Virus record (IMG/VR): IMGVR_UViG_3300032236_002285
Coordinates: 372,001-436,000 of that record
Strand: one strand, 5' to 3'
Length of the DNA stretch: 64,000 bases
Position numbers and translations under genes: made by a program. The notes below the pieces were generated by a model. The model searched no databases. It had not been told where the DNA came from and was given only the letters and a program-made list of their open reading frames with translations. Positions 16,360-56,771 of the stretch are shown piece by piece; position 1 is the stretch's first letter; each line of letters opens with the position of its first letter.

Positions 16360-16387
16360 TAAACAAAATATCCATATATAGATATAA
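16360..16387 (+). promoter_or_regulatory. TAAAC-N18-TATAA motif (putative middle promoter)
   Basis: The same spacing occurs at six gene-upstream sites. Confidence 0.65.
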
Positions 16388-16392
16388 CTAAT

Positions 16393-16650
16393 ATGGAAAT
16401 GTATCAAGTTCAACTGGTTCTAATTAACAAATTCGGTGAGTTCAAGGGCAAGCCTGCCGAAATCGATGAAGAAACATTACAGAGTTTGATTGAAATGTCT
16501 AAGACATTTTATATGAGCGGTGGATTTGAACTAACCTGCGAAGATAATAAATATGTTATATTCGCCCCTGAAATAGTAAAAGAATCTATTTTGGTAATAA
16601 ATAAAAAACTAATATCTGTTAACACAGAACAAGAAGAAGAAAATGTATAG
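16393..16650 (+). CDS. Hypothetical protein
   Basis: ORF directly after the promoter motif, coupled to the next gene. Confidence 0.7.
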   Translation: MEMYQVQLVLINKFGEFKGKPAEIDEETLQSLIEMSKTFYMSGGFELTCEDNKYVIFAPEIVKESILVINKKLISVNTEQEEENV

Positions 16651-17293
16651 AGCTAAATTCAAGAAGTTTGGTGGAGAATATATCCCAGACATCATACAAT
16701 ACTTAAAAGAAGCTATTGAAGCTGACCCAACGATCACTATTACCGTTGGTTGCGACTCTATTCAAAAGAGACGTAGAACCGTTTATGCTATAACTCTGAT
16801 GTTGTATAATCAAGACATTAGAAGAGGTGCGCATGTTGTTTTCTTCCGTGAGTCTTGTACTAAGATAAGAGATAATAACGAAAGACTTTACAAAGAAGCT
16901 CAATATCTACACGATGTTGCTACTTTTTTAGATAAGGAACTTTCTGACTTCTATGTTAGAAAAGACTTAACAGAAATTGAAAGAAAAAGATATAAGTTTC
17001 ACTTAGCAAAATGTAATGGTGAATACTCTGATATTCCGGTTCACTATGAAGATGGTGTTATGAAGGCTTTGAGTTTAAACCATGCTGATAATGTTGATTT
17101 CAGACTTGTTGATATTCATATTGATTTTAACCCATCAGAAGGAACAAAGAATGAAAGAGGTGTTAGTAAGAATAAATCTTATGCTTCTTATAAGTCTTAT
17201 GTACCTTGGTTAAGAGGTTTAGGTTTCAGAACCTGGGCTAAACCATCTGCTTTTGGTGCTACAACTGCTGCTGACCTTTTATTACAAGACTAA
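16643..17293 (+). CDS. RNase H-like YkuK (DUF458) family protein
   Basis: ITVGCDS, RLYKEA, IHIDFN, KPSAFGATTAAD. Confidence 0.75.
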   Translation: MYRAKFKKFGGEYIPDIIQYLKEAIEADPTITITVGCDSIQKRRRTVYAITLMLYNQDIRRGAHVVFFRESCTKIRDNNERLYKEAQYLHDVATFLDKELSDFYVRKDLTEIERKRYKFHLAKCNGEYSDIPVHYEDGVMKALSLNHADNVDFRLVDIHIDFNPSEGTKNERGVSKNKSYASYKSYVPWLRGLGFRTWAKPSAFGATTAADLLLQD

Positions 17294-17294
17294 T

Positions 17295-17603
17295 ATGTTC
17301 CAGATAAACTCAATGTTATTAATTAAGATGGGTTGGACAGAATACAAATGGGGTTATTCTAATAGCCCCTTTTTTGATGATCCAAATTTAGTTAAGTTTT
17401 ATATAAGAAAAGAAACTAAATACATTATTATAAAAGAAATTGAAAGAAAGAAACAAATATTAAAAAATTCATATAAATTTGTAGTTGGTGATAAAGAAAT
17501 TTATTTCAACTCAAATATGGAGTTATTAAAATTAGTTATTAATCACGAAGCTTGTAACGAAGAATATAAAAGACACTTTAAACTAAATAGAATATTAAAA
17601 TGA
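17295..17603 (+). CDS. C-tagged hypothetical protein
   Basis: Start moved to MFQ after the upstream stop; ends KRHFKLNRILK. Confidence 0.7.
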   Translation: MFQINSMLLIKMGWTEYKWGYSNSPFFDDPNLVKFYIRKETKYIIIKEIERKKQILKNSYKFVVGDKEIYFNSNMELLKLVINHEACNEEYKRHFKLNRILK

Positions 17604-18193
17604 AAAAAGAAGTAAAAATATTAGGCTTATCATATAGCCAATCAAACACTGGATCATATGTGGTTGTTCTTTCTGAGAAGAAAGGTAAACGTAAATTACC
17701 TATAGTAATCAAGCCATCTGATGCTCAACAAATCGCACTTAAAATTGAAGGTGTTAAATCACCAAGACCCTTAACACATGACTTATTTAAAAGTGTTGTT
17801 GAAGCTTACACTATCGATGTTCAAGAAGTTTATATCTATGCTATACTCGAAGGTGTTTTCTATACGAAGTTAATTACATCCAACGGTTTAGATGAAGTTG
17901 AGATTGAATGTACTGCGGGTGATGGTATTGCTCTTTCGATTGTATTTGATTGTCCTTTGTATGCTTCTAAAGAAGTTTTAGAAATGTCAGGTGTTTATAT
18001 AAACGATGATGGTTCTACAATGAGTAACTCTGAAGTCGAAGTTGAAGATGATGAAGACTATGTAGAAGAACCAAAAAGGGTTGTATCTATTGAGAATCTA
18101 CAACATATGATGGAAGAAGCGCTTCGTAACGAAGAATATGAAATTGCGGCTGAAATCCGTGATAGAATTGCTAAGATGAAAGAGCAACAATAA
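17600..18193 (+). CDS. Bifunctional nuclease (DUF151) with a C-terminal UVR domain
   Basis: RKLPIVI, PRPLTHDL, EGVFY, and EEYEIAAEIRD. Confidence 0.88.
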   Translation: MKKEVKILGLSYSQSNTGSYVVVLSEKKGKRKLPIVIKPSDAQQIALKIEGVKSPRPLTHDLFKSVVEAYTIDVQEVYIYAILEGVFYTKLITSNGLDEVEIECTAGDGIALSIVFDCPLYASKEVLEMSGVYINDDGSTMSNSEVEVEDDEDYVEEPKRVVSIENLQHMMEEALRNEEYEIAAEIRDRIAKMKEQQ

Positions 18194-18207
18194 AATAAAG
18201 ATTAATA

Positions 18208-19041
18208 ATGATTAGCTATATCGGTGGTAAAAGTAAAATAGGATGTTGGATTAGAAATTATATTCCTAATAATATAGAAACTTATGTAGAGCCTTTTAGT
18301 GGTGCTTTCTGGGTTTTCTTTAAATTAAATACTCCGAGTTTTAAAAACCTTAAAACCGTTGTTTATAATGATGTCAACCCACTAAATGTAAACCTTTTCT
18401 TATGTTTGAAAGAATATAAGAAGTTCTGGGAAATGACTCAAAACACACCTATTGAGAGTAAGGAGTTATTTGATAAATGTAAATCAGATATCTTTGATAC
18501 TGATTTTGTATTAGATATGAATAACCCTAACTTTGATATTGCTTTCAAGTATGCTTATGTGTTAAGTCAAGTTTGGTCAGGTACTGACCCAAGAAAAGGA
18601 AATCTTATTCTAAAAGGTGGTTATGAAGGTAAAGATGGTACTTACAAATCTAAGTTTGAAATCTTTAGAAGTAAACTAATTGATCCTAAATGGCAAAAAT
18701 ATCTTGACTCAATTACTAATATTGAGAATATGGATTTTGAAGATGTTGTTAAAAAATACGACTCACCAACAACTTATTTTTATTGTGACCCACCATACTT
18801 CAAAACCGAAGACTACTATATCAACCATAGTTTTGGTATTCAAACACATGAAAGATTGGCTAACTGCTTAAAATCTATTCAAGGTAAGTTTTCACTGAGT
18901 TACTATCATTTTGATTTATTAGATGAATGGTTTCCGGTAACAGAATACACTTGGAAAAATAAAGAGTTTGCTAAAACAGCAATGGCTGTTCCAGGAAAAG
19001 CTCAAACCAAAGGTATAGAGCTCTTAATAATGAACTATTGA
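18208..19041 (+). CDS. Dam-like (D12 class) N6-adenine DNA methyltransferase
   Basis: YIGGKS, YVEPFSG, YND, DPPY, ELLIMNY. Confidence 0.9.
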   Translation: MISYIGGKSKIGCWIRNYIPNNIETYVEPFSGAFWVFFKLNTPSFKNLKTVVYNDVNPLNVNLFLCLKEYKKFWEMTQNTPIESKELFDKCKSDIFDTDFVLDMNNPNFDIAFKYAYVLSQVWSGTDPRKGNLILKGGYEGKDGTYKSKFEIFRSKLIDPKWQKYLDSITNIENMDFEDVVKKYDSPTTYFYCDPPYFKTEDYYINHSFGIQTHERLANCLKSIQGKFSLSYYHFDLLDEWFPVTEYTWKNKEFAKTAMAVPGKAQTKGIELLIMNY

Positions 19042-19042
19042 T

Positions 19043-19387
19043 ATGATACTTTTAACCAGTCAGTTATTATTTGAAAACTCTAAAACTTGGCCAAATCGTC
19101 TACAACGGATATTAACATCAATTGTTTATGATGAAACTGGCAATAGATTTGTTAAAATAAGTCAAAAAATATCAGCTGAGCTAACACAAGATTTATCATC
19201 ATCTAACCCCATCGTTGATATTATGGATGTAATTAATTTAGATTATGTAGATTATGTTTTCAATGAAGAAGAAATTGAAGAAATATTTGAAATGGTAGAC
19301 GATGTTCCGGATAATGATATAGTTAGAAAAGCAAAAGAATTTATTGTTTCTTATAGAAGAAATAAAAAAATAGACAAATTATTATGA
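19043..19387 (+). CDS. C-tagged hypothetical protein
   Basis: Ends RRNKKIDKLL. Confidence 0.7.
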   Translation: MILLTSQLLFENSKTWPNRLQRILTSIVYDETGNRFVKISQKISAELTQDLSSSNPIVDIMDVINLDYVDYVFNEEEIEEIFEMVDDVPDNDIVRKAKEFIVSYRRNKKIDKLL

Positions 19388-19698
19388 GGTACAAAAAGAT
19401 AATTAAGGAATGGAATGAAGCAACGCCTAAAGAAGTTTGGGAAGGAGTTAGAGATAATTTTCTTTTTGGATTTATTGGTGCAACACTGGTTGTATTTATT
19501 GCAACTAAAATAGATTTCGCAGTTTTGATTGGATACTTTACCTACTATATGTTTATGGGTAGAATTGTTAACCGTCCTAAATATGTAACTGACTTAGGTA
19601 AGTTAATTGTATTTCCAATACCATCAGCGATAGGTGCTTTCACCGGATATAAAATATCATACTTGATGATAGAATTTATAAGTCAAGTATTAAAATAA
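19384..19698 (+). CDS. Small membrane protein
   Basis: About three hydrophobic segments. Confidence 0.7.
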   Translation: MRYKKIIKEWNEATPKEVWEGVRDNFLFGFIGATLVVFIATKIDFAVLIGYFTYYMFMGRIVNRPKYVTDLGKLIVFPIPSAIGAFTGYKISYLMIEFISQVLK

Positions 19699-19726
19699 AA
19701 AACCCTCATTGATTGAGGGTTTTTTT
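19697..19726. terminator. Bidirectional terminator
   Basis: aaaaaaccctca-ttgat-tgagggttttttt. Confidence 0.85.
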
Positions 19727-20285
19727 ATTCATCATAAGTAAAATTCATACTTATTATTATTCTCTTTTGATTACTTAGATTCTTTGTAACACAATGTGGT
19801 AGTGTTGAATCAAATAATATAAATTTACCAGTCTCGGCTTTTTCAGTGTACATTCTTGAAACAAATGGATTCTCATCACATTTGAAAACTATATCACCGC
19901 TATTTTCCGGCACATCAACATAATAAACGGCACTTACTTTAGCACCTGCTTGATAATTATAATGAGTAGCGTGGTCGTGCCAGTTTGTACTTTCATTATG
20001 TTCATGTACAACCGCCCAAACAACTTCATTGATATCTTGTGACGGTACTGGTTTAAGTTTATCTCCATATTGTTGATAAAACTTATCCATAATAGTATTC
20101 ATTAGATTTTTTACTTCTGGATAGAAATCTAATCTAATGTCTTCATTTCTTATACTTTCTGGATCTTCTTCCATAAATTTACCTTCTTCATAGTTTCTTA
20201 GGATATTTGCTTTAAGTTTAGCATTATCTATATTATCTAAATAACCAGTAAGATATTCAACCGTGTGTAAAACTTTAACTTCCAT
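19725..20285 (-). CDS. 2OG-Fe(II) oxygenase-like protein (TIGR02466-like)
   Basis: WHDH, SAVYYV, FILFDSTLPHCV, RIIISMN. Confidence 0.8.
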   Translation of the reverse strand: MEVKVLHTVEYLTGYLDNIDNAKLKANILRNYEEGKFMEEDPESIRNEDIRLDFYPEVKNLMNTIMDKFYQQYGDKLKPVPSQDINEVVWAVVHEHNESTNWHDHATHYNYQAGAKVSAVYYVDVPENSGDIVFKCDENPFVSRMYTEKAETGKFILFDSTLPHCVTKNLSNQKRIIISMNFTYDE

Positions 20286-20286
20286 A

Positions 20287-21144
20287 TTACATTGATAATG
20301 CTTTGCTAAATCCGTTGGGACAAGTTGATGTACAAATTAATGTAGCAACAACTGGTGCCACTGCTGCGCCGATAGCGATACCAACACCAGCTGGTGTAGC
20401 CCAAAGAGCCGCACAATCTAAACTATAATATATGCAGTTGGAAATTACATTTTTTAATAACTTAGCATTTACAGAACCTTTAACACCCGGTATTAATAAG
20501 AAAGCATCAACACAAACTTCAGCCATTGCTGTTGCAACCGCCATCTTAGCCGCCATATCTGCTGTATATAATACAGGAGTAGCCATAAATGACAATGAAG
20601 TTGATGTAATTGTTCCAGGATCACCAGGAGCTGGTTTTGGAGTGAAGTAAGTAACAACACCTAAAGAGATTGCTGATGTTAAAGCAAGACGACAAGCGTT
20701 CTCATCTAACCATTGATAAGCTTCTTCAGCAACATCTTTAAGAACTTCAACACCTGCGATTACTTGTTTTTCAACTTGTCTACTTAGATCATTAAATTCT
20801 TTTGATGTTGTGTCTAGGCCAGCTTTAGCCAATTCTTCTGTACTTTTAAGAACGGTAGCTTGTATAGACTCGGTTCTTTTAATTGTATCATTTGCAAAAT
20901 CAACAGCGTAATTATAAGTATCTTTTGTGATATCAATAACTTTATTTGTTGTATCTACAATTGCATTACCAGCGTCTACAGCTGTTTTTTCAATTGCATT
21001 ACCTGCATCTGTTGTAGTTTTTTCAATCGCTTTGCCGGTATCAGTGGCTGTTTTTTCGATTGCTTTACCGGTATCTTTAGCACCTTTATCGATTGCTTTA
21101 CCGGCATCTTTGAATCCTTTACTGATAGATTTTCCCCATCCCAT
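20287..21144 (-). CDS. Protein with N-terminal 11-aa amphipathic repeats and a hydrophobic, Cys-containing C-terminal domain
   Basis: About five copies of D[AT]G[KN]AI[DE]Kxxx (33-nt repeat). Confidence 0.75.
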   Translation of the reverse strand: MGWGKSISKGFKDAGKAIDKGAKDTGKAIEKTATDTGKAIEKTTTDAGNAIEKTAVDAGNAIVDTTNKVIDITKDTYNYAVDFANDTIKRTESIQATVLKSTEELAKAGLDTTSKEFNDLSRQVEKQVIAGVEVLKDVAEEAYQWLDENACRLALTSAISLGVVTYFTPKPAPGDPGTITSTSLSFMATPVLYTADMAAKMAVATAMAEVCVDAFLLIPGVKGSVNAKLLKNVISNCIYYSLDCAALWATPAGVGIAIGAAVAPVVATLICTSTCPNGFSKALSM

Positions 21145-21232
21145 TTCGTTTATAATTATTTTTTATAATTTATATATCTAATGAGGTGAAGTCTGTTTTT
21201 TAATAAATAAATTATAAAATTATAAATTGTCT

Positions 21233-21463
21233 ATGAAATTTAAAATTGGAGATGTCGTAATTAAAACCACAGGTGGTAATAAAATGACGGTATCTGATAA
21301 TATAAAAGACGGTGTTTATAAATGCCTTTGGTTCGTTGAAAGTTCTTTAAACGAATCAATATTTAAAGAAGAAGATATCGTTACTCTGAGTGAGTATAAA
21401 AGATTTCTAAAAACAGAAGAAAGAGAAGATAAAATTAATCAGCTACTTAAAGATTCCAATTAA
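21233..21463 (+). CDS. DUF2158/YodC-like small beta-barrel protein with C-tag
   Basis: MKFKIGDVVIKTTGGNKMTV...CLWF; ends EREDKINQLLKDSN. Confidence 0.75.
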   Translation: MKFKIGDVVIKTTGGNKMTVSDNIKDGVYKCLWFVESSLNESIFKEEDIVTLSEYKRFLKTEEREDKINQLLKDSN

Positions 21464-25038: not shown

Positions 25039-25069
25039 TTTGTTTTTGATAAAAAATTACTTATCTTTG
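25039..25069 (+). promoter_or_regulatory. Bacteroidota sigma70-type promoter
   Basis: TTTG-N19-TATCTTTG. Confidence 0.8.
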
Positions 25070-28115: not shown

Positions 28116-28140
28116 AAAACCCTCGTCAAGAGGGTTTTTT
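28116..28140 (+). terminator. Rho-independent terminator
   Basis: aaaaccctc-gtcaa-gagggtttttt. Confidence 0.8.
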
Positions 28141-28193
28141 ATTTTAAACTTTATCACTATTTCCGTATAAAACATAAAAATATAGTATGATAG

Positions 28194-28946
28194 ATGATAG
28201 AATTGCTACGCAATCAACTAGAGTGTTTTAACGACTTACAATTTGAATTTGATCCTAAATTACATAGATATACATACGAAGGTGAGCCTTTTGTTTCTGT
28301 AACTCGATTCATACAACAATTTCACAAGCCATTTGAACAAGACTATTGGTCTAAAGTAAAAGCCGATCAGGCCGGTGTTCCACAAGATTGGATATTAGCC
28401 GAATGGAAAAAATTAAATGATTATGCTAATGAAGTTGGTACCGACACTCACCAATGGATTGAAGATTACTTTAATCAAATTTGGAAACCTCTTCCTAATA
28501 ACTTAGATGTTATACACCGTATTAATAAATTTAATAAGATTTATGCTAAACATCTTTATAAACTTGAGCCTCTAAAGTTTGAGGTGAGAGTATTTTCAAA
28601 AAGATGGAAAATAGCCGGAATGATTGACTCTTTATTTGTTTATAGAGGAAAGATTTACATTCTTGACTGGAAAACAAATAAAGACTTTACAGATAATAAC
28701 CATAAGAAAGGCACCTATGAGAAACTACTTGCGCCTTTTCAAGATTACTATAAAAATCATCTAAACGAATACTCAATACAACTATCTATGTATGCCTTAA
28801 TTTTAGAAGAGTGGGGCTTTCAAGTAGGTGGCGCTTACATAGTTCATATTGGACCTGGTGATGAAGAAGCAGAACTATATAAAGTAGTTGACATGAGAGA
28901 CAACCTAAAATTATTTTTAAATGGATCTATACAGGAGTCTAACTAA
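28194..28946 (+). CDS. PD-(D/E)XK superfamily exonuclease
   Basis: SVT, GTDTHQWIE, IAGMID, ILDWKT, YSIQLSMY. Confidence 0.85.
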   Translation: MIELLRNQLECFNDLQFEFDPKLHRYTYEGEPFVSVTRFIQQFHKPFEQDYWSKVKADQAGVPQDWILAEWKKLNDYANEVGTDTHQWIEDYFNQIWKPLPNNLDVIHRINKFNKIYAKHLYKLEPLKFEVRVFSKRWKIAGMIDSLFVYRGKIYILDWKTNKDFTDNNHKKGTYEKLLAPFQDYYKNHLNEYSIQLSMYALILEEWGFQVGGAYIVHIGPGDEEAELYKVVDMRDNLKLFLNGSIQESN

Positions 28947-29261: not shown

Positions 29262-29744
29262 TTAAACATTTGGCTCAACTACTTCACCAGAAGCTACCTC
29301 TGTATAAAATAATCCTTTTTGTTTAATAACATCCAAGATAGTATTAGTAGCATCAATTCTATCTGTGTTAAAGATAACTTCCATCTTACCCATAACTAAA
29401 TCAATAGAGTTTTGGTTAGCCCACTCATCGATGATAACCGACAATTGATCATAAACACTTGTATTTAGATCTTCTGACATTTGCTTAAGTTGAGTTTTAA
29501 ATTCAGTATCAGCTTTCATTAGAGTATCTTGGATTTGTTTGAATTTCTCCATATCTCTTTTTTGAGATACTTCATCTACAATAAGACCTGATTGAGATCT
29601 TGTAATGATTGCTTGCATTTCTTTTCTAGAAGGTTCAACACTCTCCAACATTCTTCTTTTTTCAGATTCAATGTTTTTGTAACCATCAACATATGGTTGA
29701 AAATTTCTTGTTAAAACTTCAAAGTCTATTACTCTTAATTCCAT
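29262..29744 (-). CDS. OmpH/Skp-like chaperone without a signal peptide
   Basis: LRVIDFEVL, long coiled coil, IIDEWANQNSIDLVM, DATNTIL; TAAAC-N18-TATAA at 29763-29790 (-). Confidence 0.7.
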   Translation of the reverse strand: MELRVIDFEVLTRNFQPYVDGYKNIESEKRRMLESVEPSRKEMQAIITRSQSGLIVDEVSQKRDMEKFKQIQDTLMKADTEFKTQLKQMSEDLNTSVYDQLSVIIDEWANQNSIDLVMGKMEVIFNTDRIDATNTILDVIKQKGLFYTEVASGEVVEPNV

Positions 29745-29787
29745 TTAAAATATTTTTTCTTATTATAGATTAAATTGATATAAATGT

Positions 29788-30339
29788 TTAAGAAAGAAGA
29801 TAATCAACAGCTATTTTATATCTGTTTAATAAATTAGTATCTTCTGAGTAAGCAGCATCTGTTGTATCAACAATAATACTAGATGTTGCACCTTGTTTTG
29901 TGACTTCTAAATAAGTTACTCTTGATCCGATTACTTTAGCAAATTGTTTATTTTGTAGATAGTAACTAGAATCTGGAGAGAATTGATCTACCTCAACTAT
30001 CTGACCAATTGTTTGATTTGTTGAATCTAAATGAATATCAAATCCCATTTGATAAAGACTTTTCTTATCCATTAAAGCTTTTATTTTCTTTGATACAGAT
30101 GGGTTTGTTTGGAATAAAATACTTTCCCATGTTTTGTTTTTAACATCAACTATACTTTGAAAATCGGTAATATCAATACTATATTTGTAATATAATGTCA
30201 ATTCAAAATAATTATAATCACCTTTTGTAATTAAGTCATCTATCAATGTATGATACTCATAGATGTATTCTCTGCCTTTAGTAGCAAGTTTATCTATTTG
30301 AGAATATATTTTATTAATTTTCTTTTTATCTGGACTCAT
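29788..30339 (-). CDS. Hypothetical protein (putative late)
   Basis: TAATATATA box 4 nt upstream (30344-30352). Confidence 0.7.
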   Translation of the reverse strand: MSPDKKKINKIYSQIDKLATKGREYIYEYHTLIDDLITKGDYNYFELTLYYKYSIDITDFQSIVDVKNKTWESILFQTNPSVSKKIKALMDKKSLYQMGFDIHLDSTNQTIGQIVEVDQFSPDSSYYLQNKQFAKVIGSRVTYLEVTKQGATSSIIVDTTDAAYSEDTNLLNRYKIAVDYLLS

Positions 30340-31511: not shown

Positions 31512-31602
31512 AAATTAATAATTTATTTATTTAGTGTATATATTTATTTTCTTAAACCAAATACTTAAATTTTCATATAAACTTCAAATAACTAATTTTA
31601 TA

Positions 31603-32073
31603 ATGGAACAAATCAATTCACTTAATCAAGTCGCTGACTTTCACAGGACATTTAATGCACCTATTTTAGATACACCTCAAATCCCATCTGAACAAAGATG
31701 CCAACTTCGTGTTAATCTTTTACAAGAAGAATTAAATGAACTATCACAAGCTATTAAAGACAATGATATTGTAGAAATCGCAGATGCTCTTTGTGATATT
31801 CAATACGTTCTTTCCGGTGCTGTATTAGAATTTGGCTTAGGTGAAAAATTTGTTGAGTTATTCAATGAAGTTCAAAGAAGTAATATGTCTAAAGCTTGTT
31901 CAACTGAAGAAGAGGCTCAAAGAACTTTAGAACACTATAAACAAAAAGATGGCACTGAAGGTTACTACAAACAAGTAGGAGATAAATGGGTTGCTTATAG
32001 AAACGGTGATGATAAAGTATTAAAATCAGTTGGGTATTCAGCTGCAAATATAAAGGGGATGTTGAATGATTAG
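31603..32073 (+). CDS. MazG-like/PRA-PH nucleoside triphosphate pyrophosphohydrolase
   Basis: VADFHRTF, LLQEELNEL, EIADALCDIQYV, EVQRSNMSK; start moved to MEQ after TAAAC-N18-TATAA (31553-31580). Confidence 0.85.
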   Translation: MEQINSLNQVADFHRTFNAPILDTPQIPSEQRCQLRVNLLQEELNELSQAIKDNDIVEIADALCDIQYVLSGAVLEFGLGEKFVELFNEVQRSNMSKACSTEEEAQRTLEHYKQKDGTEGYYKQVGDKWVAYRNGDDKVLKSVGYSAANIKGMLND

Positions 32074-40455: not shown

Positions 40456-40515
40456 AGATTATATATTAAACAAAGTGAACTCTTAGAACTATAATTAAAA
40501 AAACATAATAAATAG

Positions 40516-41694
40516 ATGCCAAAATTAATTTTAAATACTATCGTTAAAGATGAATCACATTGTATTTTAACAATGTTAAAATCAGCTATACAAATATCAG
40601 ATGCTATAGTTATAGCAGACACTGGTTCTACTGATGGAACACAAGAAATAATTAGAAAATTTGGAGAGGAAAATAATATTCCAACATATGTCGTTGAAAG
40701 ACCATTTGATGACTTTGAGAAAAGTAGAAATTTTGGAATGGAGAAGGCAAGAGAAATTGTAAAAGAGTTAGGTTGGAATCCAAATGATTGTTGGACTTGG
40801 TGGTGTGATGCTGATGAAACTATTATAGTTGATTCAAAGTTTGATAAAAAACAATTTGTTAATGACCTTTATATGATAAACACATACATAGGTCAAATGA
40901 AATATACAAGAAATACATTTGCTAGAGTTTCAAAACCTTTTAGGTTTTATGGTCCAATTCACGAGTTCATTGTTTGTGATGACCAAAACATCACATCTGG
41001 TTTAGCAACTGATATTCACGTTGATGTTAAGATGATTGGTGCTTCTTGGCAAGGTGATATCCCAACTAAATATAAGAACCACGCTTTTGTATTAGAAAAG
41101 TACATTGATGCTAATCGTCAAGATCCTCGTTGGATTTTCTATACAGCTCAGTCATATCACGACTCTGCTTCTATTCCTGATAATAAAGAAGAAAATGAAG
41201 AAAGATTGCGTAGAGCAATGAAGTATTACAAAGAACGTGTTAATAGACCGGATGGTTATGCTGAAGAGGTTTACTATTCACAGTTCCGTATTGGTACTAT
41301 TATGCGTGCTATGGAAGAACCTTGGAACTTAACACACCAAGAGTTATTGAAAGCTTATAATATGGATCCAATGAGAGGTGAATCTATTAAGATTATCATT
41401 GATTACTACTTACAAATGAATGAGTGGAATATGGCTTATTTATATTCTAAGTTTGCTAAATTAAACTTCCACGGTAAGAATCCTTATCCTAATAGATTAT
41501 TATTTGTTGATGAAGCTCTTTATGTTTGGAAATTTGCTGAAGCTCACGCCGCTTCTTGTTTCTACACAGGTAGAATGGATGAGGCTAAAGCATCATTTAC
41601 TGAGATAATGCAAATATCTAAAACAAGTCCTCAGTACTTTACACCAGAAGATATGGCTAAGATCCAACAAAACGCACAATTCTTCTTAAAGTAA
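40516..41694 (+). CDS. Family 2 glycosyltransferase with a TPR-like C-terminus
   Basis: IVKDES, DTGSTDGT, DFEKSRN, DADE, GPIHE; TAAAC-N18-TATAA at 40467-40494. Confidence 0.85.
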   Translation: MPKLILNTIVKDESHCILTMLKSAIQISDAIVIADTGSTDGTQEIIRKFGEENNIPTYVVERPFDDFEKSRNFGMEKAREIVKELGWNPNDCWTWWCDADETIIVDSKFDKKQFVNDLYMINTYIGQMKYTRNTFARVSKPFRFYGPIHEFIVCDDQNITSGLATDIHVDVKMIGASWQGDIPTKYKNHAFVLEKYIDANRQDPRWIFYTAQSYHDSASIPDNKEENEERLRRAMKYYKERVNRPDGYAEEVYYSQFRIGTIMRAMEEPWNLTHQELLKAYNMDPMRGESIKIIIDYYLQMNEWNMAYLYSKFAKLNFHGKNPYPNRLLFVDEALYVWKFAEAHAASCFYTGRMDEAKASFTEIMQISKTSPQYFTPEDMAKIQQNAQFFLK

Positions 41695-42843: not shown

Positions 42844-43494
42844 TTATTTACTTAAAAGTTTTATTAAGTCTTCTGTGATTTTAGTAATCATCTTTTTACC
42901 TTCAACTTCTAATAAAGGAATGTTTTTAACCATTGAGTATTTATCATTACCATCAACAACTATTTTAGAAATAGCTTCAATGAACTTTTTATCTTTACCA
43001 TATTTCTTAGTATAGTATCCTTTTAACTCGTTAACGAATTTAGATAAATCAACACCTTCTTTGTAGTTATATTTAACCATTTGAAGTTCGTTGTCTTGCT
43101 TCTCAACCATAATATACCAAATAGACTTCTTAGAAACTTTAACATTCTCAAGGAAGTTATAAGCTTTAGATGCTTTAGTATTCTTAGGGAACTTAGCAAC
43201 CTTACCAGTGAAGTTTACATTTTCATGTGTTTTATCACCTTTCATTTCAATATCATTTTCAAATTCATCTTCGTCAGAAGGTAAATCTACCGTTTGATCT
43301 TGAGGAATCAAGTTTTTTCTTGAAGCTGGTTTTTCGATTTTTTTAGAATCTTTAGGCACATTAGGATTTGCTGGCAAATCTGAATCAGTAGCCGGTTGAG
43401 CGTCTAACGAAGGATTAACCTCTTCAATCTTAGATTTGCTCTTGATATCTGAGAATTTCTTAAATCCAACAATCTTTTTGTTTTCTTCTGCCAT
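42844..43494 (-). CDS. Putative late protein with a tag-like segment (KKIVGFKKF)
   Basis: TAATATATA at 43519-43527. Confidence 0.7.
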   Translation of the reverse strand: MAEENKKIVGFKKFSDIKSKSKIEEVNPSLDAQPATDSDLPANPNVPKDSKKIEKPASRKNLIPQDQTVDLPSDEDEFENDIEMKGDKTHENVNFTGKVAKFPKNTKASKAYNFLENVKVSKKSIWYIMVEKQDNELQMVKYNYKEGVDLSKFVNELKGYYTKKYGKDKKFIEAISKIVVDGNDKYSMVKNIPLLEVEGKKMITKITEDLIKLLSK

Positions 43495-43559
43495 TTGATT
43501 TTATTACGTTTTGTCTATTATATATTAAATAAATTATTTAGTTTTCTTGATTTTTAAAA

Positions 43560-47169: not shown

Positions 47170-47711
47170 TCCATAAAATCATAAATATCATCTGGTAAAA
47201 ATTCTGGATCAGTTATTTTTAAATCATAGTCTCTAAAGTCTCCGAAGTCAATATCATCAGCATCTAGTCTTCTTGTAATTGAGTCATTTTTATCTTGTCG
47301 TCCTAATAGTCTTGACTCTCTAACCTCTCTATCAATATCAAGATAAACAACAAAGCAACCTTCTCTCATCTCAGGTGTTAAGTTAGTAAACTCACCAGGT
47401 GTCATAATAAATACTTGTGACTCATTGAATTCTTGTAAGGTTATACCATAGTACCATGTTTCTGGTTCTCTACCATCAGGTGTAACATAAAATGTTTGGT
47501 AAGCTAAAAATTTATTTTCATTTATAGATTGTGTAAACTCATAATCAGATACAAAATTGTAAGTAATACCTTGTTCTTCATTTAGTCTTTGAGGTCTTGT
47601 TGTCCATTTAAGACAAGCTTTTAATCCTTTTTCAACAAGCTTTCTCATTAAGAAGTCCTTACCTGAACCAGATTTACCTAAAATAATTAGTTTCTCATTT
47701 TTAACATTCAT
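47166..47711 (-). CDS. gmk: Guanylate kinase-like protein
   Basis: GKSGSGKD, TTRPQRLNE..G..YNFVS, WYYG; TAAAC-N18-TATAA at 47735-47762 (-). Confidence 0.8.
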   Translation of the reverse strand: MNVKNEKLIILGKSGSGKDFLMRKLVEKGLKACLKWTTRPQRLNEEQGITYNFVSDYEFTQSINENKFLAYQTFYVTPDGREPETWYYGITLQEFNESQVFIMTPGEFTNLTPEMREGCFVVYLDIDREVRESRLLGRQDKNDSITRRLDADDIDFGDFRDYDLKITDPEFLPDDIYDFMD

Positions 47712-47804
47712 TATATTGTTAATAAATTTATTAATTATAATTTGTAAATATGAAAAAGTTTAAGTATTGAATTTTTAATATATACTAAAAACAAATAATA
47801 ATAT

Positions 47805-48848: not shown

Positions 48849-48850
48849 TA

Positions 48851-50943: not shown

Positions 50944-50960
50944 AAAAAAAGAATTAATAC

Positions 50961-50980
50961 TTTTAATATATATATTAAAA
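50961..50980. promoter_or_regulatory. 20-bp palindrome containing back-to-back TAATATATA boxes
   Basis: ttttaatatatatattaaaa lies between two divergent N-tagged genes. Confidence 0.75.
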
Positions 50981-50998
50981 TACTACATCACAAATCGA

Positions 50999-52372: not shown

Positions 52373-52423
52373 ATTTTAGGAATACATGATATAAAAATAT
52401 ATATCTAAAATTCTTAAAATTAA

Positions 52424-55400
52424 ATGGCTTTACCTGGTTTATTTCCACTTTACCCCGATCCAATACCAATGAAATATCAAGTTTCATTAGGTCTACCGCC
52501 TCTTCCGGTAAGTGAAATAACTAAGTCAATTGGTATAACTTCATCAAGCTCATTTTTAGTTCCTAATATTGAATATCTTCAAAAGTTTATTGAAGGTGAT
52601 TTAGGAATTGCTGATAAGGCAGTAAAAGAAACATTATATAAAAACTTTAATGACCCTATTGCTCAGAATAATGATAAAGTATTCAAAAGCTATGCTAGTC
52701 TAAATCAAATTGACATACCAGATATTAATAAGTATAAAGTAGATGGTAAAATAAAATTCCCTAAAGAAGATGTAACAGCTCCTAATTTAGATGGCATTGG
52801 ATTCAAAGCATTTGAGAAAACCATTATGACTTCTATCTTTGAAACTCAGAAACCATATCTTGAAGTTGCTAAATTAGTTATTGCTAATGTTGCTAAAATA
52901 GAAGACATAACCGCAAGAGTCATGCCTTTATTGGGTGTTCCTCTTAAAACTAAATCGCTAAAACCAACAGGTAATAGTGGTGCGGGTGATAGACCTAAAG
53001 CAATTGGTTATCAAAATGGTGATGAGTTAAAGAAAGCTCTTTCTCAATTACAAACACTAACTAATCAAGGATCAAAGATAAAAATAGATAAAAATGGTAA
53101 TGCTACTCAAAGTATAACACCAACCGGAACAGCAAGCGTTTCGGGTAACGGTGATAATACAAACTGGCAGATACTATCAAGTGTTTATTCAACTGGTAAA
53201 TTCATACCAGGCATAGACTATCAATATACTTATATTGATTTACCAAGCCAAACAAAGAACACACCAGAAACAGCTGACTTAAATTTAGGAGATGATGATC
53301 CATATAGTGGTTATAAACCAGAGAGAATAATATTGGGTATATTTAGATCGGATGGAACGCCATTAGATCCTAATGAATATCTAAAGACTATTGGTTCAAA
53401 TGGCAATAATATAACATATAATGAAACAAATTTCAAAAGAGCTGATTGGGTATTAAAATCACCGAAGTGGCATTTACCACCATATCTTTCAGATACAAGA
53501 TCGGCTATTTACTCTTGGCCGGCATTTGGCTCACCAACATATAAGTGGAAAGGTCCTTTATTATTAACTCAAGATAGTAAGACGAAACCAGCGGATGGTT
53601 GGGAAATAATGAAATATGAAAAAGGAGATAAGAATGTAATTACCGGAGATGACGCTATCGAAGGTGACCCAATAATAACTGGGTTTGATACTAATCAAAT
53701 TAATGAGTATAAGTCTTATTTTACCGATACGGTTAAATATAAAATGAATCAATCTGATGGTTTAGAACAAACAGAAAAAGATCAATATTCTAATGAAATA
53801 ATTAGCAAACTAAATATTCAATCACATCTTCAAAATGTTTACTTATATGGTCAATCAAAGTCATCTGTTTACAAACAAATTAATAATAAACCGGCTTACC
53901 CTGAATCATTAAAAATATCTTTTAAGCCTTTTCAGATATATTCAGCATCGGCTTCTCAAGATGTTAATCTTGCTGCTTATAATAAATCAGTGGGTTTACA
54001 ACCAGGATTTATTTGGATTGATCCAGAATCTGATTATGAAACAAAGATAATAAGAGTTGATCCTACAACTAAAATTGCTTTTGAAGAGGGAAAAGGTCAG
54101 CCTCAAATTTCATCAACAATTAAATCATTTGTTAAAAACAAAGCCAGTTTTAGTATATCTAATGGTCAAAACTTTAATATTGATATTCAAAAGAACGGCT
54201 TAGTAACGGAATCATTTACAAATGTTAATCAGTATGTTCTTGAAAATTGGAATTATAATTCAGATACTAATTTACCACCAGAAAATAGATTTGAGAATAC
54301 TAACTTTTATAACATCTCTATTTGGTCAACAACACCTACAAAAGACTATGTTAATAAATCAGGAACAATAGAATTAAATCCTGACTCCTACTATCGTGAG
54401 TTAGTTAGAGAAAATGATAAATGGCTATATAAATCATATATCTATGATAGCAATGGTGATAAATCTTATGTCGTGATATCAGATGGTGATATACTACTTA
54501 ATGATAATATGAAAACTAGAGTTAGAATTCAAAATGGTTATATTATAAGATGGTATTATGCTTATAATAGAGTATTTAATGCTACAAACCTACCCGCATT
54601 TGGAAAAGGAAGAAACTTAGTATTAAACTACACAAACGATTTGGATTCAAATTCTAACTTAATCATAAACACAACAGATACTGATATACCTTTATATCAA
54701 TTAAAAGTCGAAAATAGTGATTTTCCTTATGGTAAAATTATAGACCCATCAAAAATAACTAACGACAACTTAATTAAAGACCAATTATTCTCAAAAGGTA
54801 AGTATGGTCATGGTGATGCTGAAAATCCACAAGAGATAGAAGTTATACAAAGATATATGCTAACTGATTTAGACACAGAGTCTTATTATATCATAGAGGG
54901 AGTTTTAACAGAAAAAAATACACAAACTGACACGGTACCTTCAACAGGCGGCGCTGCGTCCGGTGGTGGTTATTATAGACTACCACATGCTTTAGGTGCG
55001 ACTAAAGTTTTCTTATCTTTATTAGTAGATATCTTTTCAAAGTTAATACCTCAAATAACTAAGATGATAGCTCTTTTCAAAAATCCAGGAAGTTTTATAA
55101 TAGACATTATACAAAGAAAGTTAGGTGAAGGTTTTTCTATTTTTTCTAAACAATCATTTGATACATTTGAAAAGGCAAAATCTATTTCAAATAAGAAAGT
55201 TGATAGCACCAATAGAGTATCCGATAAGGTTAATAGGCTTAAAGATACATTTAAAAACTCACCATTATCTAATGTGGTTTATGTTGATAAAAAAGGTAAT
55301 TACAAATTTTTACTTGATGGTGTAGCTATGTTACCATTTGAGATGTTTGGTTTAAGTATTCCTTTTGGTGCTGATTTGAACTTTTCTAATTTACCTGATG

Positions 55401-56719
55401 TGCCTATAAAATTAATAACAGATGTTAAAACAGCAAAAGCTAAAAATATTCAAGACTTCTTAAAACCTAAGTTAAAAGAATTTAACGGACCAGGTAGTAC
55501 CGGTGTTGCGCCAACAGGAGCAGGAAAGCTAGCACCTGGATTAAATATCTCAGATATAAAGTCAATTAAAGATGATCCTATTTATAATACTAATGTAAAT
55601 AATGGTAAAACCAATCCTAATGATTATCAGATTATTGATGTTAAATATTCAACTGGTTCTTATATAAATGGTGTGAATTATAATTATATTTATATTAATC
55701 AAGATGAAGATAAAATATTAACTGATGCTAATAATTTAGTAAATACTCCTAATGAAGCGGTCGATTTACCTAAGGCTCAAAAAACTTTACAGGATTTGAA
55801 TGATGCTCAAAAGAAAGACCCTACAAATGAGGCAATAAAAGATATGATTAATAAACTTAAAAATAAGTTAGCAAATCTTTCTGATAATACTCAACCAATT
55901 ATTAAAATGTTATTAGGCTTTGTTACAATACCTGTAAAAATAATTGGTGGTATAATAAGTTGGTTAATGGACTTTTTCAAAAGTCTAACAAATCCACTAA
56001 CACTACCTGCTAAAATAGCAGAATTATTATCTTTTAGTTGGCTCATGAAGTTTTTCACACCTATTGGTATGATGGAACTTATAGGATTTAAGTTTGAACC
56101 AGCTAAACTAGCAGAGTGGCTTGCCTTGGTTAAGGTACCAAGTGTAAAACCACCTAATATATCACCTAAAATACCAGATGGTTTTGATTTACCAAGTGCT
56201 CATTATTACAAGGATGCAACACCAAAAGGTAGATTTTTAATACCAGATGATTTTGATATAGCTGACTTAAATATGGTAATTGCTGCTCCGTTTATTCCTA
56301 AATTACCAACCTATACAGCTAGACAATTCAGAGAGAATCCAACAAGACCTATTAAGTTAATATTGCCTTTTCTTTGTTTCTTTGAAAAAATAATAAATGG
56401 TATAATTGATTTTATTTGGTCAACATTAGGTATAGAAGCTTTAATACCAGCACCTCATATAAAATTATGTAGTAATTCAGTAAATCCTAGTATAAGTGAT
56501 GCTGTTAAGATAGCTGATGACTTGAAGAAAACGGGAACTGAACCGGTTGCTACAGGTGGTACCTTTAGTAATGGTAGTAGCACTAATATACCAACAGATG
56601 CTGGGTTTTTATATGATATAACTCTTGATAATGGGACCGTAGTAAAAGGTTTAAACTATGAAGAAATGCAAAAGTATATTAAAGACCATGAGAATATTGG
56701 TTATGATTTTAAATTCTAA
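52424..56719 (+). CDS. Large (1431 aa) putative late, probably structural protein
   Basis: AAATATATA upstream; internal duplication YSTGKFIPGIDYQYTYI / YSTGSYINGVNYNYIYI; hydrophobic helical segments. Confidence 0.7.
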   Translation: MALPGLFPLYPDPIPMKYQVSLGLPPLPVSEITKSIGITSSSSFLVPNIEYLQKFIEGDLGIADKAVKETLYKNFNDPIAQNNDKVFKSYASLNQIDIPDINKYKVDGKIKFPKEDVTAPNLDGIGFKAFEKTIMTSIFETQKPYLEVAKLVIANVAKIEDITARVMPLLGVPLKTKSLKPTGNSGAGDRPKAIGYQNGDELKKALSQLQTLTNQGSKIKIDKNGNATQSITPTGTASVSGNGDNTNWQILSSVYSTGKFIPGIDYQYTYIDLPSQTKNTPETADLNLGDDDPYSGYKPERIILGIFRSDGTPLDPNEYLKTIGSNGNNITYNETNFKRADWVLKSPKWHLPPYLSDTRSAIYSWPAFGSPTYKWKGPLLLTQDSKTKPADGWEIMKYEKGDKNVITGDDAIEGDPIITGFDTNQINEYKSYFTDTVKYKMNQSDGLEQTEKDQYSNEIISKLNIQSHLQNVYLYGQSKSSVYKQINNKPAYPESLKISFKPFQIYSASASQDVNLAAYNKSVGLQPGFIWIDPESDYETKIIRVDPTTKIAFEEGKGQPQISSTIKSFVKNKASFSISNGQNFNIDIQKNGLVTESFTNVNQYVLENWNYNSDTNLPPENRFENTNFYNISIWSTTPTKDYVNKSGTIELNPDSYYRELVRENDKWLYKSYIYDSNGDKSYVVISDGDILLNDNMKTRVRIQNGYIIRWYYAYNRVFNATNLPAFGKGRNLVLNYTNDLDSNSNLIINTTDTDIPLYQLKVENSDFPYGKIIDPSKITNDNLIKDQLFSKGKYGHGDAENPQEIEVIQRYMLTDLDTESYYIIEGVLTEKNTQTDTVPSTGGAASGGGYYRLPHALGATKVFLSLLVDIFSKLIPQITKMIALFKNPGSFIIDIIQRKLGEGFSIFSKQSFDTFEKAKSISNKKVDSTNRVSDKVNRLKDTFKNSPLSNVVYVDKKGNYKFLLDGVAMLPFEMFGLSIPFGADLNFSNLPDVPIKLITDVKTAKAKNIQDFLKPKLKEFNGPGSTGVAPTGAGKLAPGLNISDIKSIKDDPIYNTNVNNGKTNPNDYQIIDVKYSTGSYINGVNYNYIYINQDEDKILTDANNLVNTPNEAVDLPKAQKTLQDLNDAQKKDPTNEAIKDMINKLKNKLANLSDNTQPIIKMLLGFVTIPVKIIGGIISWLMDFFKSLTNPLTLPAKIAELLSFSWLMKFFTPIGMMELIGFKFEPAKLAEWLALVKVPSVKPPNISPKIPDGFDLPSAHYYKDATPKGRFLIPDDFDIADLNMVIAAPFIPKLPTYTARQFRENPTRPIKLILPFLCFFEKIINGIIDFIWSTLGIEALIPAPHIKLCSNSVNPSISDAVKIADDLKKTGTEPVATGGTFSNGSSTNIPTDAGFLYDITLDNGTVVKGLNYEEMQKYIKDHENIGYDFKF

Positions 56720-56771
56720 TAAACATTTTAGTAAGCTTCATATATAACTAAAAACATAAATTAAATTAAAA

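What the first reader, a model, noticed from the sequence alone, without database searches (positions are those of the whole stretch)
16360..56747. Bipartite motif TAAAC-N18-TATAA with fixed spacing heads the metabolic operons
Seen with an exact 18-nt spacer at 16360-16387, 29763-29790(-), 31553-31580, 40467-40494, 47735-47762(-) and 56720-56747, and with a 16-nt spacer at 28145 and 57188. It always sits at a gene boundary and points at the next gene or operon: YkuK/nuclease/Dam, Skp-like, MazG-galE, glycosyltransferase-folA, gmk-like, exonuclease and AAA ATPase. It does not match the Bacteroidota housekeeping consensus. Inference: -35/-10 elements for a phage-encoded or host alternative sigma factor (middle promoter).
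Basis: partly seen in the sequence, partly recalled or inferred. Interest (0 to 1): 0.7.

Follow-up and report, generated by a model that had tools for sequence, protein, structure and literature searches.

The report
Middle promoters of a giant phage
The repeated TAAAC-N18-TATAA signal is real and is most likely the promoter read by a sigma factor that this 476-kb freshwater Bacteroidota phage encodes itself. It probably switches on replication, nucleotide-metabolism and helper genes, and the phage's own late sigma factor, after the early genes; this is a familiar kind of phage control in a group where it had not been described.

Summary
All six exact sites and both 16-nt-spacer sites are present, lie in non-coding DNA and point at the next gene. 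In the whole 476-kb phage genome, intergenic TAAAC-Nx-TATAA peaks sharply at 18 nt (19 sites) and 17 nt (9 sites), against 0-4 for other spacers; counts inside genes are flat. The same peak occurs in two related genomes. An unbiased dyad scan ranks AAAC-N18-TATA first.

The true motif is (T/A)AAAC, then a T-rich stretch, N17-18, TATAA, and a conserved A six bases later. That A is the A of the ATG in a leaderless subset.

The phage encodes an ECF-type sigma factor (regions 2 and 4; closest solved relative is B. subtilis SigW, whose -35 is TGAAACnTTT). The gene sits in an operon headed by host-type (Bacteroidota sigma-A) promoters. In several relatives an M site precedes the sigma gene itself.

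The motif also precedes the gp55-like late sigma gene in 42 of 47 distinct relatives, with both boxes conserved and the spacer free.

A more abundant TTTAATATATA motif heads structural genes. I infer a cascade: host sigma-A, then phage ECF sigma, then late sigma. No RNA data were available, so start sites and sigma assignment remain inferred.

The parts
16360..16387 (+). M-class promoter. TAAAC at 16360-16364, 18-nt spacer, TATAA at 16383-16387. The ATG at 16393 lies 5 nt after TATAA (leaderless type). It heads an 85-aa ORF, then YkuK-like PF04308, a bifunctional nuclease and Dam.
16324..16353 (+). Intrinsic terminator hairpin plus T-run, ending just before the M site at 16360.
28116..28138 (.). 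Bidirectional intrinsic terminator hairpin directly upstream of the M site at 28145.
28145..28170 (+). M-class promoter variant with a 16-nt spacer. The ATG at 28194 lies 23 nt after TATAA. It heads a PD-(D/E)XK nuclease gene.
29763..29790 (-). M-class promoter with an 18-nt spacer. The ATG at 29744 lies 18 nt after TATAA. It heads the OmpH/Skp-like gene. The upstream gene's TAA stop is part of the TAAAC box.
31553..31580 (+). M-class promoter with an 18-nt spacer. The ATG at 31603 lies 22 nt after TATAA. It heads a MazG-like gene (PRA-PH), a 108-aa ORF and a GalE-like epimerase. A second, overlapping 16-nt-spacer match lies at 31578-31603.
40467..40494 (+). M-class promoter with an 18-nt spacer. 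The ATG at 40516 lies 21 nt after TATAA. It heads a GT2 glycosyltransferase and DHFR. It sits back to back with a leaderless TAATATATA promoter on the minus strand (40460-40468).
47735..47762 (-). M-class promoter with an 18-nt spacer. The ATG at 47711 lies 23 nt after TATAA. It heads a guanylate-kinase-like gene.
56720..56747 (+). M-class promoter with an 18-nt spacer. The ATG at 56772 lies 24 nt after TATAA. It heads a 73-aa ORF. TAAAC begins at the base after the stop codon of the 1431-aa ORF.
57188..57213 (+). M-class promoter variant with a 16-nt spacer. A TTG at 57238 lies 24 nt after TATAA. It heads an AAA ATPase gene; the start codon is uncertain.
43518..43545 (-). Ambiguous site. AAAAC-N18-TATAA overlaps a TAATATATA (L-class) box at 43519-43527, 23-24 nt upstream of the ATG at 43494.

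Best explanation
TAAAC-N18-TATAA is the core of a phage-specific promoter class, which I call M. Its fuller form is (T/A)AAAC, a T-rich stretch, a total spacer of 17-18 nt (rarely 16), TATAA, 5 nt, and then an A that is probably the start site.

Proposed mechanism:
1. Host RNA polymerase with Bacteroidota sigma-A transcribes early operons from TTTG-N19-TAnnTTTG promoters.
2. One early operon encodes a phage ECF-type sigma factor of 262 aa, at genome 209428-210216, outside the window.
3. This sigma binds host core polymerase. Its region 4 reads the AAAC box at about -33 to -29, and its region 2 reads TATAA at about -10 to -6. Transcription starts at the A six bases downstream.
4. That A is the A of the ATG in about a quarter of cases (leaderless mRNA). 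Otherwise it is followed by an A-rich leader of about 15-20 nt.
5. The roughly 40 M promoters per genome drive replication, recombination and nucleotide-metabolism genes, proteases and chaperones, auxiliary metabolic genes, and the gp55-like late sigma gene.
6. The late sigma then probably reads the abundant TTTAATATATA promoters of structural genes.

Shown: the motif, its spacing, position, orientation and conservation; the sigma genes and their promoter contexts. Inferred: the start site, which sigma reads which motif, and the temporal order.
For: Spacer peak:
- Intergenic counts peak at 18 and 17 nt in this genome, while coding counts are flat.
- Two relatives whose sigma is about 70% identical show the same peak.
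- For WAAAC, N17/18 outnumbers N21/22 by 56 to 17 in a third, near-complete relative.
- An unbiased scan of 4-mer dyads over 864 upstream regions ranks AAAC-N18-TATA first: 91 against 21.9 at other spacings, z = 14.4. The next family is the Bacteroidota sigma-A dyad.
- 41 co-oriented, gene-proximal [TA]AAAC-N17/18-TATAA sites occur in this genome, against about 1.7 per control spacer.

Start-site geometry:
- The 6th base after TATAA is A in 50 of 54 seed sites.
- Distances to the ATG are bimodal, at 5 nt or 18-24 nt. The other two promoter classes show the same pattern.

Conservation:
- Orthologous genes (metallopeptidase, DnaB, thioredoxin and the late sigma) keep both boxes while the spacers diverge.
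- 42 of 47 distinct upstream regions of the late-sigma gene in IMG/VR relatives keep NAAAC-N17/18-TATAA behind a conserved terminator, with a variable spacer.

Sigma factor:
- It is the only protein in the genome with both Sigma70_r2 and r4_2.
- It passes TIGR02937, the sigma70-ECF model.
- Its best solved relative is SigW.
- The SigW -35 consensus is TGAAACnTTT. The Lys that contacts the C:G pair is conserved. The Thr at A-34 is Ser, as in sigma-E. The Arg that reads G-35 is Asn, which fits T/A in place of G (with PMC6713349).
- An AAC core in the -35 is the ECF hallmark (PMC5758882).
- The recognition helix is invariant across homologues of 67-90% identity.
- The sigma gene lies in an operon headed by leaderless host-type promoters. 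That layout recurs in relatives.
- In four or more relatives an M site lies 60-70 nt upstream of the sigma gene, the ECF-style autoregulation pattern.

Other machinery:
- No RNAP beta, T7-type RNAP, AsiA or MotA was detected.

Gene classes:
- M genes are DnaB, SbcC, RNR small subunit, thioredoxin, ClpP, a ClpB-like protein, GlnA and others.
- TAATATATA genes include the portal, a tail fibre and many large ORFans.
- Host-type promoter genes include the NAD ligase and helicases.
Against: - No transcript data. No RNA run was listed for this DNA, so no start site has been mapped and no timing measured.
- The -10 box TATAA is unlike the usual ECF -10 (CGT-type).
- The 18-nt gap exceeds the 14-17 bp quoted for ECF promoters (PMC5758882).
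- In this genome the sigma gene has no M site of its own. In two relatives (L032, L033) a TAATATATA box sits upstream of it instead.
- The link between sigma and motif rests on co-occurrence, domain logic and one alignment-based residue argument, not on binding data.
- Every genome of the clade that was complete enough to judge has the sigma, so no natural 'sigma absent, motif absent' control was found.
- Gene starts come from my simple ATG-only ORF caller.
Confidence: 0.72

Rival explanations
1. The motif is a real promoter, but a host-encoded alternative (ECF) sigma factor of the Bacteroidota host reads it, and the phage sigma does something else.
For: Bacteroidota carry many ECF sigmas. The phage sigma's best subfamily model is a Bacteroidetes ECF family, TIGR02985, although below its cut-off. 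A host paralogue could therefore share its specificity. No binding data exist.
Against: The phage sigma is conserved throughout the clade, with an invariant recognition helix. It is placed under host-type early promoters. In several relatives an M site precedes it. A lytic programme that depends on a stress-gated host ECF sigma would be fragile.
Confidence: 0.12
2. This is activator-type (T4 MotA-like) control. The AAAC box would bind a separate phage DNA-binding activator, and TATAA would be read by another sigma, either the gp55-like one or a modified host sigma.
For: TATAA resembles the core of the TTTAATATATA motif and lies at the same distance from the putative start. T4 middle promoters combine a -30 box with a -10 element (established knowledge).
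Against: No MotA or AsiA homologue was detected. The gp55-like gene is itself behind an M promoter in 42 of 47 relatives, so M must fire before that protein exists. Host sigma-A of Bacteroidota needs TAnnTTTG, which M sites lack. The AAAC-plus-T-tract box matches ECF -35 elements.
Confidence: 0.08
3. The motif is not a promoter. It could be a by-product of AT-rich intergenic composition, of terminator T-runs, or of the A-rich translation-initiation context of Bacteroidota.
For: Intergenic DNA here is about 78% A+T. Leaders are A-rich, as expected for translation without a Shine-Dalgarno sequence (PMC6847099, listed). Some sites abut terminators.
Against: Composition cannot produce a spacer-specific peak at 17-18 nt with flat neighbours. 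It cannot explain an essential C, strict orientation towards genes, or conservation of the boxes with free spacers across 47 sequences.
Confidence: 0.03

Closest known systems
ECF sigma promoters, especially Bacillus subtilis SigW (group ECF01): TGAAACnTTT, about N16, CGTA
   Same: The promoter is bipartite and read by a two-domain (sigma-2 + sigma-4) sigma. The -35 has an AAAC core followed by a T-tract. SigW is the closest solved relative of the phage sigma. In some relatives the sigma gene carries its own M site, the autoregulation layout.
   Different: The -35 has T/A where SigW has G, and the G-reading Arg is Asn in the phage protein. The -10 is TATAA rather than CGTA. The gap is 17-18 nt rather than about 16. 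No anti-sigma partner was identified. The sigma is phage-borne, sits under host-type early promoters, and has a variable N-terminal extension (199-262 aa).
Bacillus phage SPO1 sigma cascade (host sigma-A, then gp28, then gp33/34)
   Same: It works the same way. Early genes use the host sigma, an early-encoded phage sigma redirects host core polymerase to middle promoters, and a middle gene product provides late specificity (established knowledge; see also PMC13401047, listed).
   Different: The sigma proteins and consensus sequences are unrelated and the host phylum is different. Here the late factor is T4 gp55-like (phrog_234).
Phage T4 middle (MotA box + AsiA) and late (gp55, TATAAATA) promoters
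   Same: There are three temporal classes. The late class appears to be a single extended -10-like block read by a gp55-family minimal sigma. Group 2 jumbo phages, including Bacteroidetes ones, are known to encode minimal and fuller sigma factors (PMC7824862).
   Different: Here the middle class is sigma-replacement rather than sigma appropriation: no MotA or AsiA was detected. The late box is TTTAATATATA.
Bacteroidota housekeeping (sigma-A) promoter TTTG-N19-TAnnTTTG
   Same: It is present in the same genome upstream of a different gene set, with the same 4-nt or roughly 20-nt spacing to the ATG.
   Different: M sites lack both TTTG elements and have a different geometry and consensus.

Membership tests
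ECF-sigma-dependent promoter | -35 element with a conserved AAC core | tested here: met
   (T/A)AAAC. The C is essential, since TAAAA shows no spacer-specific excess. The AAC hallmark is quoted in PMC5758882.
ECF-sigma-dependent promoter | Cognate sigma with only regions 2 and 4 (no 1.1, no region 3) encoded nearby or in the same genome | tested here: met
   Sigma70_r2 spans residues 89-157 and r4_2 spans 200-244, with a 43-aa linker. TIGR02937 scores 82.9 bits against a cut-off of 42.9. All PDB hits are ECF sigmas.
ECF-sigma-dependent promoter | Group-specific -10 element, commonly CGT-containing, with a 14-17 bp spacer | tested here: not met
   The -10 is TATAA. The gap between AAAC and TATAA is 17-18 nt, and the quoted range is 14-17 bp. 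This is an atypical ECF promoter.
ECF-sigma-dependent promoter | Target motif upstream of the sigma's own gene (autoregulation) | tested here: inconclusive
   Present in relatives L027, L028, L029 and L035. Absent in this genome, where the gene is operon-internal. Replaced by TAATATATA in L032 and L033.
ECF-sigma-dependent promoter | Direct recognition by the sigma (binding or in vitro transcription) | not testable with these tools
   The complex-prediction job with DNA was not folded. No wet-lab data exist.
Phage middle promoter (temporal class) | Expression after early genes and before late genes | not testable with these tools
   No RNA run was listed. Indirect support only: the sigma sits under host-type promoters, and the late sigma sits under M.
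T4-type MotA/AsiA middle promoter | MotA activator and AsiA co-activator encoded; MotA box at -30 with a host-sigma -10 | tested here: not met
   PF09114 gave no hit. PF09010 gave only E = 0.89. The consensus is different.
Bacteroidota sigma-A promoter | -33 TTTG and -7 TAnnTTTG | tested here: not met
   M-site logos lack both elements. This consensus forms a separate class in the same genome.
Canonical sigma-70 promoter TTGACA-N17-TATAAT | Both hexamers near consensus, and enrichment over chance | tested here: not met
   The sigma-70 consensus scan found 94 sites against 105.6 in shuffles. Only the -10 half resembles TATAAT.

The most novel reading that the evidence does not exclude
A clade of uncultivated freshwater Bacteroidota giant phages (relatives' contigs of 385 and 436 kb fetched here, and up to about 630 kb by the protein database's contig lengths) has captured an ECF-family sigma factor and retuned it. 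The retuning comprises Asn for the G-reading Arg, an AT-rich TATAA -10 and an 18-nt gap.

This sigma would be the middle switch of a three-tier cascade: host sigma-A, then ECF-type sigma, then gp55-type sigma. All three promoter classes are positioned so that roughly a quarter to a half of their genes (by class) are transcribed as leaderless mRNAs.

I found no such cascade or consensus described for phages of this phylum. It would also provide a compact orthogonal sigma/promoter pair for Bacteroidota.
Probability: 0.55. Interest if true: 0.6.

Novelty: new member of a known kind. Interest (0 to 1): 0.52.

Why it matters
Giant phages found by metagenomics have almost no experimentally known regulation. 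Here sequence alone yields a testable wiring diagram:
- three promoter classes;
- the two phage sigma genes that probably read two of them;
- the order in which they fire.

This lets uncharacterised genes, most of the genome, be sorted into early, middle and late sets. It supports the host-phylum call of Bacteroidota through the host-type promoters.

It gives an example of an ECF-family sigma used as a developmental switch by a virus, with an unusual -10 box. It also offers candidate orthogonal promoter/sigma parts for Bacteroidota genetics.

It is not a new principle. Phage-encoded sigma cascades have been known since SPO1 and T4.

Tried and rejected
- **Transcript evidence.** Two run searches (any kind, then RNA) listed only DNA metagenomes or nothing.
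- **Sigma with promoter DNA in complex prediction.** The job was not folded and no verdict exists for DNA. It is no evidence either way.
- **Annotated relatives.** A megablast of a window gene against GenBank phages found nothing.
- **Phage RNA polymerases.** Neither the Rpb2_6 nor the T7-type family was found. The T7 family rang in no control genome either, so that negative is weak.
- **A natural 'no sigma, no motif' control.** Portal relatives were either fragments or also carried the sigma.
- **An apparent fourth motif (TCAT-N8-ATAT).** It is the reverse complement of leaderless TAATATATA promoters in divergent intergenic regions.
- **Terminal repeats.** None were found.
- **Strict TAAAC enrichment on its own.** TAAAC is not enriched in intergenic DNA (146 observed, 145 expected). 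The signal lies in its pairing with TATAA at a fixed distance.


Full report
**What the window is.** The window is bases 372001-436000 of a single 476,236-bp IMG/VR virus record. Its GC content is 29.9% and CheckV rates it 97% complete. The DNA is held only by metagenome runs; two weaker holders are labelled freshwater. Gene positions below come from my own simple caller (ATG starts, longest ORFs first, 612 genes, 92% coding). Individual start codons are therefore provisional.

**The observation.** All six exact TAAAC-N18-TATAA matches are at the stated coordinates. Dinucleotide shuffles give 1.04 on average and never reached six in 100 trials. The two 16-nt-spacer sites at 28145 and 57188 exist as well. 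All eight lie in non-coding DNA and point at a co-oriented start codon 5 nt or 18-24 nt downstream. Two sit immediately after strong intrinsic terminators.

- Across the whole genome, intergenic TAAAC-Nx-TATAA counts are 19 at x = 18, 9 at x = 17 and 4 at x = 16. Every other spacer from 5 to 40 gives 0-4. Counts inside genes are flat, at about 7 per spacer.
- TAAAC alone is not enriched between genes (146 against 145 expected). The signal is in the pairing.
- I fetched two related genomes, of 436 kb and 263 kb, whose sigma factor is about 70% identical. They show the same intergenic peak: 12 and 9 sites at 18 nt, 3 and 5 at 17 nt, and no more than 3 elsewhere.
- In a third near-complete relative of 385 kb, WAAAC-N17/18-TATAA outnumbers N21/22 by 56 to 17. 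Four fragmentary relatives show weaker excesses.
- I counted every pair of 4-mers at every spacing from 8 to 26 nt in 864 upstream regions of the three genomes. AAAC-N18-TATA ranks first, with 91 against 21.9 at other spacings (z = 14.4). The next independent family is TTTG-N23-TTTG, the Bacteroidota housekeeping promoter.

**Anatomy of the motif.**
- Single-base variants show that the first base may be T or A. AAAAC gives 41 sites at 17/18 nt in three genomes, against about 3 per control spacer.
- The C is essential.
- TATAT is tolerated in the second box.
- The bases after AAAC are T-rich.
- The base before TATAA is usually A.
- The sixth base after TATAA is A in 50 of 54 seed sites.
- With the T/A first base, this genome has 41 gene-proximal, co-oriented sites at 17/18 nt. 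Control spacers give about 1.7 each.
- Distances from TATAA to the start codon are bimodal, at 5 nt or about 18-24 nt. In the 5-nt set the conserved A is the A of the ATG. Such transcripts would therefore be leaderless.

**Two other upstream motifs.**
- TAATATATA (fuller form TTTAATATATA) occurs 143 times in the genome, 127 of them intergenic. It precedes 116 genes at 4-6 nt or 19-25 nt from the ATG, with a conserved A five bases after it.
- TTTG-N(~19)-TAtaTTTGta, the Bacteroidota sigma-A consensus, precedes another set of genes, often exactly 4 nt before the ATG.
- The shared geometry of all three motifs relative to start codons is strong internal evidence that each contains a -10-type element.

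**Gene content by class** (only a sample of each class was searched).

| Class | Genes found |
|---|---|
| M sites | DnaB-like helicase, SbcC/Rad50-like ATPase, RNR small subunit, thioredoxin, PolB-exo-like nuclease, ClpP, ClpB-like AAA+, glutamine synthetase, NADAR, M16 peptidase, tyrosinase, glycosyltransferases, MazG-like, GalE-like, DHFR, guanylate-kinase-like, Skp-like, nucleases, Dam |
| TAATATATA | portal protein, a tail-fibre protein, an Rnl1-like tail-fibre attachment protein, many large proteins with no family |
| Host-type promoters | NAD-dependent DNA ligase, helicases, a helicase-methyltransferase fusion, an HNH endonuclease, tRNA nucleotidyltransferase |

**The transcription machinery encoded.**
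- The genome has one protein with both Sigma70 region 2 and region 4_2. It is 262 aa, at genome 209428-210216.
- It has one 121-aa protein matching PHROG 234, 'late sigma transcription factor', the T4 gp55 family. It lies at genome 50240-50605.
- No RNA polymerase beta-type or T7-type polymerase, AsiA or MotA was detected.
- The 262-aa protein passes the NCBIfam sigma70-ECF model. Its best subfamily is a Bacteroidetes ECF family, though below that model's cut-off.
- All its PDB matches are ECF sigmas, and B. subtilis SigW is the best at E = 2.5e-15.

**Linking the sigma to the motif.**
- A bipartite promoter needs a sigma with region 4, and only this protein has one.
- ECF promoters characteristically carry AAC in the -35 (PMC5758882).
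- The SigW -35 consensus is TGAAACnTTT (PMC6713349). Apart from the G, that is the M box with its T-tract.
- In the SigW sigma-4/DNA structure, K170 reads the G paired to C-31, T171 reads A-34, and R175 reads G-35. In the alignment the phage protein has K, S and N at these positions.
- The C and A contacts are therefore kept, and the G-specific Arg is lost. This matches T/A in place of G. It is an inference from one pairwise alignment, not a structure.
- The recognition helix (NLSTxKSQIRNGR) is invariant in eleven homologues of 67-90% identity. This fits the conserved box.

**Order of events.**
- The sigma gene is the eighth gene of a tightly packed plus-strand operon. Its first genes, a 79-aa ORF and the NAD ligase, have host-type TAnnTTTG boxes 3-4 nt before their ATGs.
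- Eleven related loci show the same layout. A host-type promoter lies 1.3-4 kb upstream on the same strand, and an M site lies about 2-3 kb downstream, before the thioredoxin gene.
- In relatives with a shorter (about 200 aa) sigma, an M site lies 60-70 nt upstream of the sigma gene itself (L027, L028, L029, L035). This is the autoregulatory layout typical of ECF sigmas. Two relatives have TAATATATA there instead.
- The gp55-like gene has an M site about 60 nt upstream.
- Across 80 IMG/VR relatives (47 distinct upstream sequences), 42 keep NAAAC-N17/18-TATAA behind a conserved terminator hairpin. The spacer and the leader vary freely while both boxes stay fixed.
- The late sigma gene therefore depends on M, so M cannot depend on the late sigma.
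- This gives the inferred cascade: host sigma-A, then phage ECF-type sigma (M promoters), then gp55-like sigma (TAATATATA promoters).

**Weak points.**
- No RNA run was listed, so start sites and timing are inferred.
- TATAA is not a typical ECF -10.
- The 17-18 nt gap is longer than the 14-17 bp quoted for ECF promoters.
- Autoregulation is not universal.
- No genome of the clade lacking the sigma was available as a negative control.
- A host ECF sigma or a separate activator cannot be excluded, although both fit the data less well.

**Comparison with what is known.**
- Functionally this is the SPO1/T4 style of temporal control by sigma replacement.
- Iyer et al. (PMC7824862) already noted that T4-related 'group 2' jumbo phages, including Bacteroidetes ones, encode a minimal and a fuller sigma factor. 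Their paper gives no promoter consensus.
- My literature searches found no description of this motif or of the cascade in Bacteroidota phages. The held library is incomplete, however.
- A 2025 paper on freshwater 'moraphages' describes giant phages with predicted Bacteroidota hosts, glutamine synthetase, chaperones and a core sigma factor (PMC12619734). They may be ecologically or phylogenetically close. I did not test kinship.

**Verdict.** It is a new member of a known kind: a promoter class dependent on a phage-encoded sigma. The -35 is ECF-like, and the -10 and spacer are unusual for that family.

Noticed in passing
window 1293, 23311(-), 23411, 25014(-), 30344(-), 40460(-), 43519(-), 43816(-), 45920(-), 47776, 49614(-), 50964, 50969(-), 60651, 60945 (each 9 nt): TTTAATATATA is the most abundant upstream motif. 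TAATATATA occurs 143 times in the genome, 127 of them intergenic. It sits 4-6 nt or 19-25 nt before the ATG, ahead of the portal, a tail fibre and many large ORFans. It is probably the late promoter read by the gp55-like sigma. It is conserved in relatives (102 of 113 and 58 of 64 copies intergenic).
   Followed up: partly
window 12890-12920, 15107-15137, 25039-25069 (+); genome-wide: Classical Bacteroidota sigma-A promoters (TTTG-N19-TAnnTTTG, consensus TATATTTGTA) precede a separate gene set: ligase, helicases, HNH endonuclease and tRNA nucleotidyltransferase. This supports a Bacteroidota host and marks the early genes.
   Followed up: partly
genome-wide; in window e.g. ATG 16393, 23305(-), 25008(-), 30339(-), 40455(-), 49608(-): All three promoter classes show a sharp second mode in which the -10-type box ends 4-5 nt before the ATG. 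This implies that a large share of genes are made as leaderless mRNAs: about 54 of 117 TAATATATA sites, 12 of 47 M sites, and 20 TAnnTTTG sites at exactly 4 nt.
   Followed up: partly
genome 50100-50240 (locus L002 about 1230-1372) and loci L153-L232: Upstream of the gp55-like gene, TATAA is followed by a conserved CATGAAA. In many relatives the spacer holds TTTCATG..CATG repeats that form an inverted repeat around the -10. This may be an operator for extra control of late-sigma synthesis. The gene also has an unusually long leader of about 55 nt.
   Followed up: no
loci L026-L036 (sigma gene at about 10001): The ECF-type sigma comes in a long form (about 255-262 aa, with a variable N-terminal extension) and a short form (about 199-204 aa). 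Its immediate promoter differs among relatives: operon-internal, an M site, or TAATATATA.
   Followed up: partly
window 31553-31603: Two overlapping M-type matches in tandem, with 18-nt and 16-nt spacers. The TATAA of the second overlaps the ATG of the MazG-like gene.
   Followed up: no
window 56717-56724 and 29786-29790(-): The TAA stop codon of the upstream gene directly abuts the TAAAC box (56717-56724) or forms part of it (29786-29790). Coding end and next promoter are packed without any gap.
   Followed up: no
window 13636-13722, 13735-13807, 14824-14898: Three phage tRNA genes: Leu-TAA, Arg-TCT and Met-CAT.
   Followed up: no
window 13824-14360 (-): A 178-aa ORF with a very weak Sigma70_r4_2-like stretch (E = 0.045) and no family hit in NCBIfam. 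A TAATATATA box lies 37 nt upstream. It may be a small HTH regulator.
   Followed up: partly
window 52424-56719 (+): A 1431-aa ORF behind a TATATA-type box, with no PHROG match. It is probably a virion protein.
   Followed up: partly
window 18208-19041 and 59789-60595: Two separate D12-class (Dam-like) N6-adenine methyltransferase genes lie within 42 kb of each other.
   Followed up: no
genome 447214-448671(-), 50774-51865(-), 67355-67873, 185477-186586(-): Unusual auxiliary genes sit behind M promoters: a tyrosinase-domain protein, glutamine synthetase, a NADAR-domain protein and an M16 peptidase.
   Followed up: no
whole record G000: IMG/VR labels the record 'provirus', yet phage promoter classes run from about 6 kb to 475 kb. 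No terminal repeat was found. The sigma protein's longest source contig is 481,145 bp, so the label may come from boundary trimming.
   Followed up: partly
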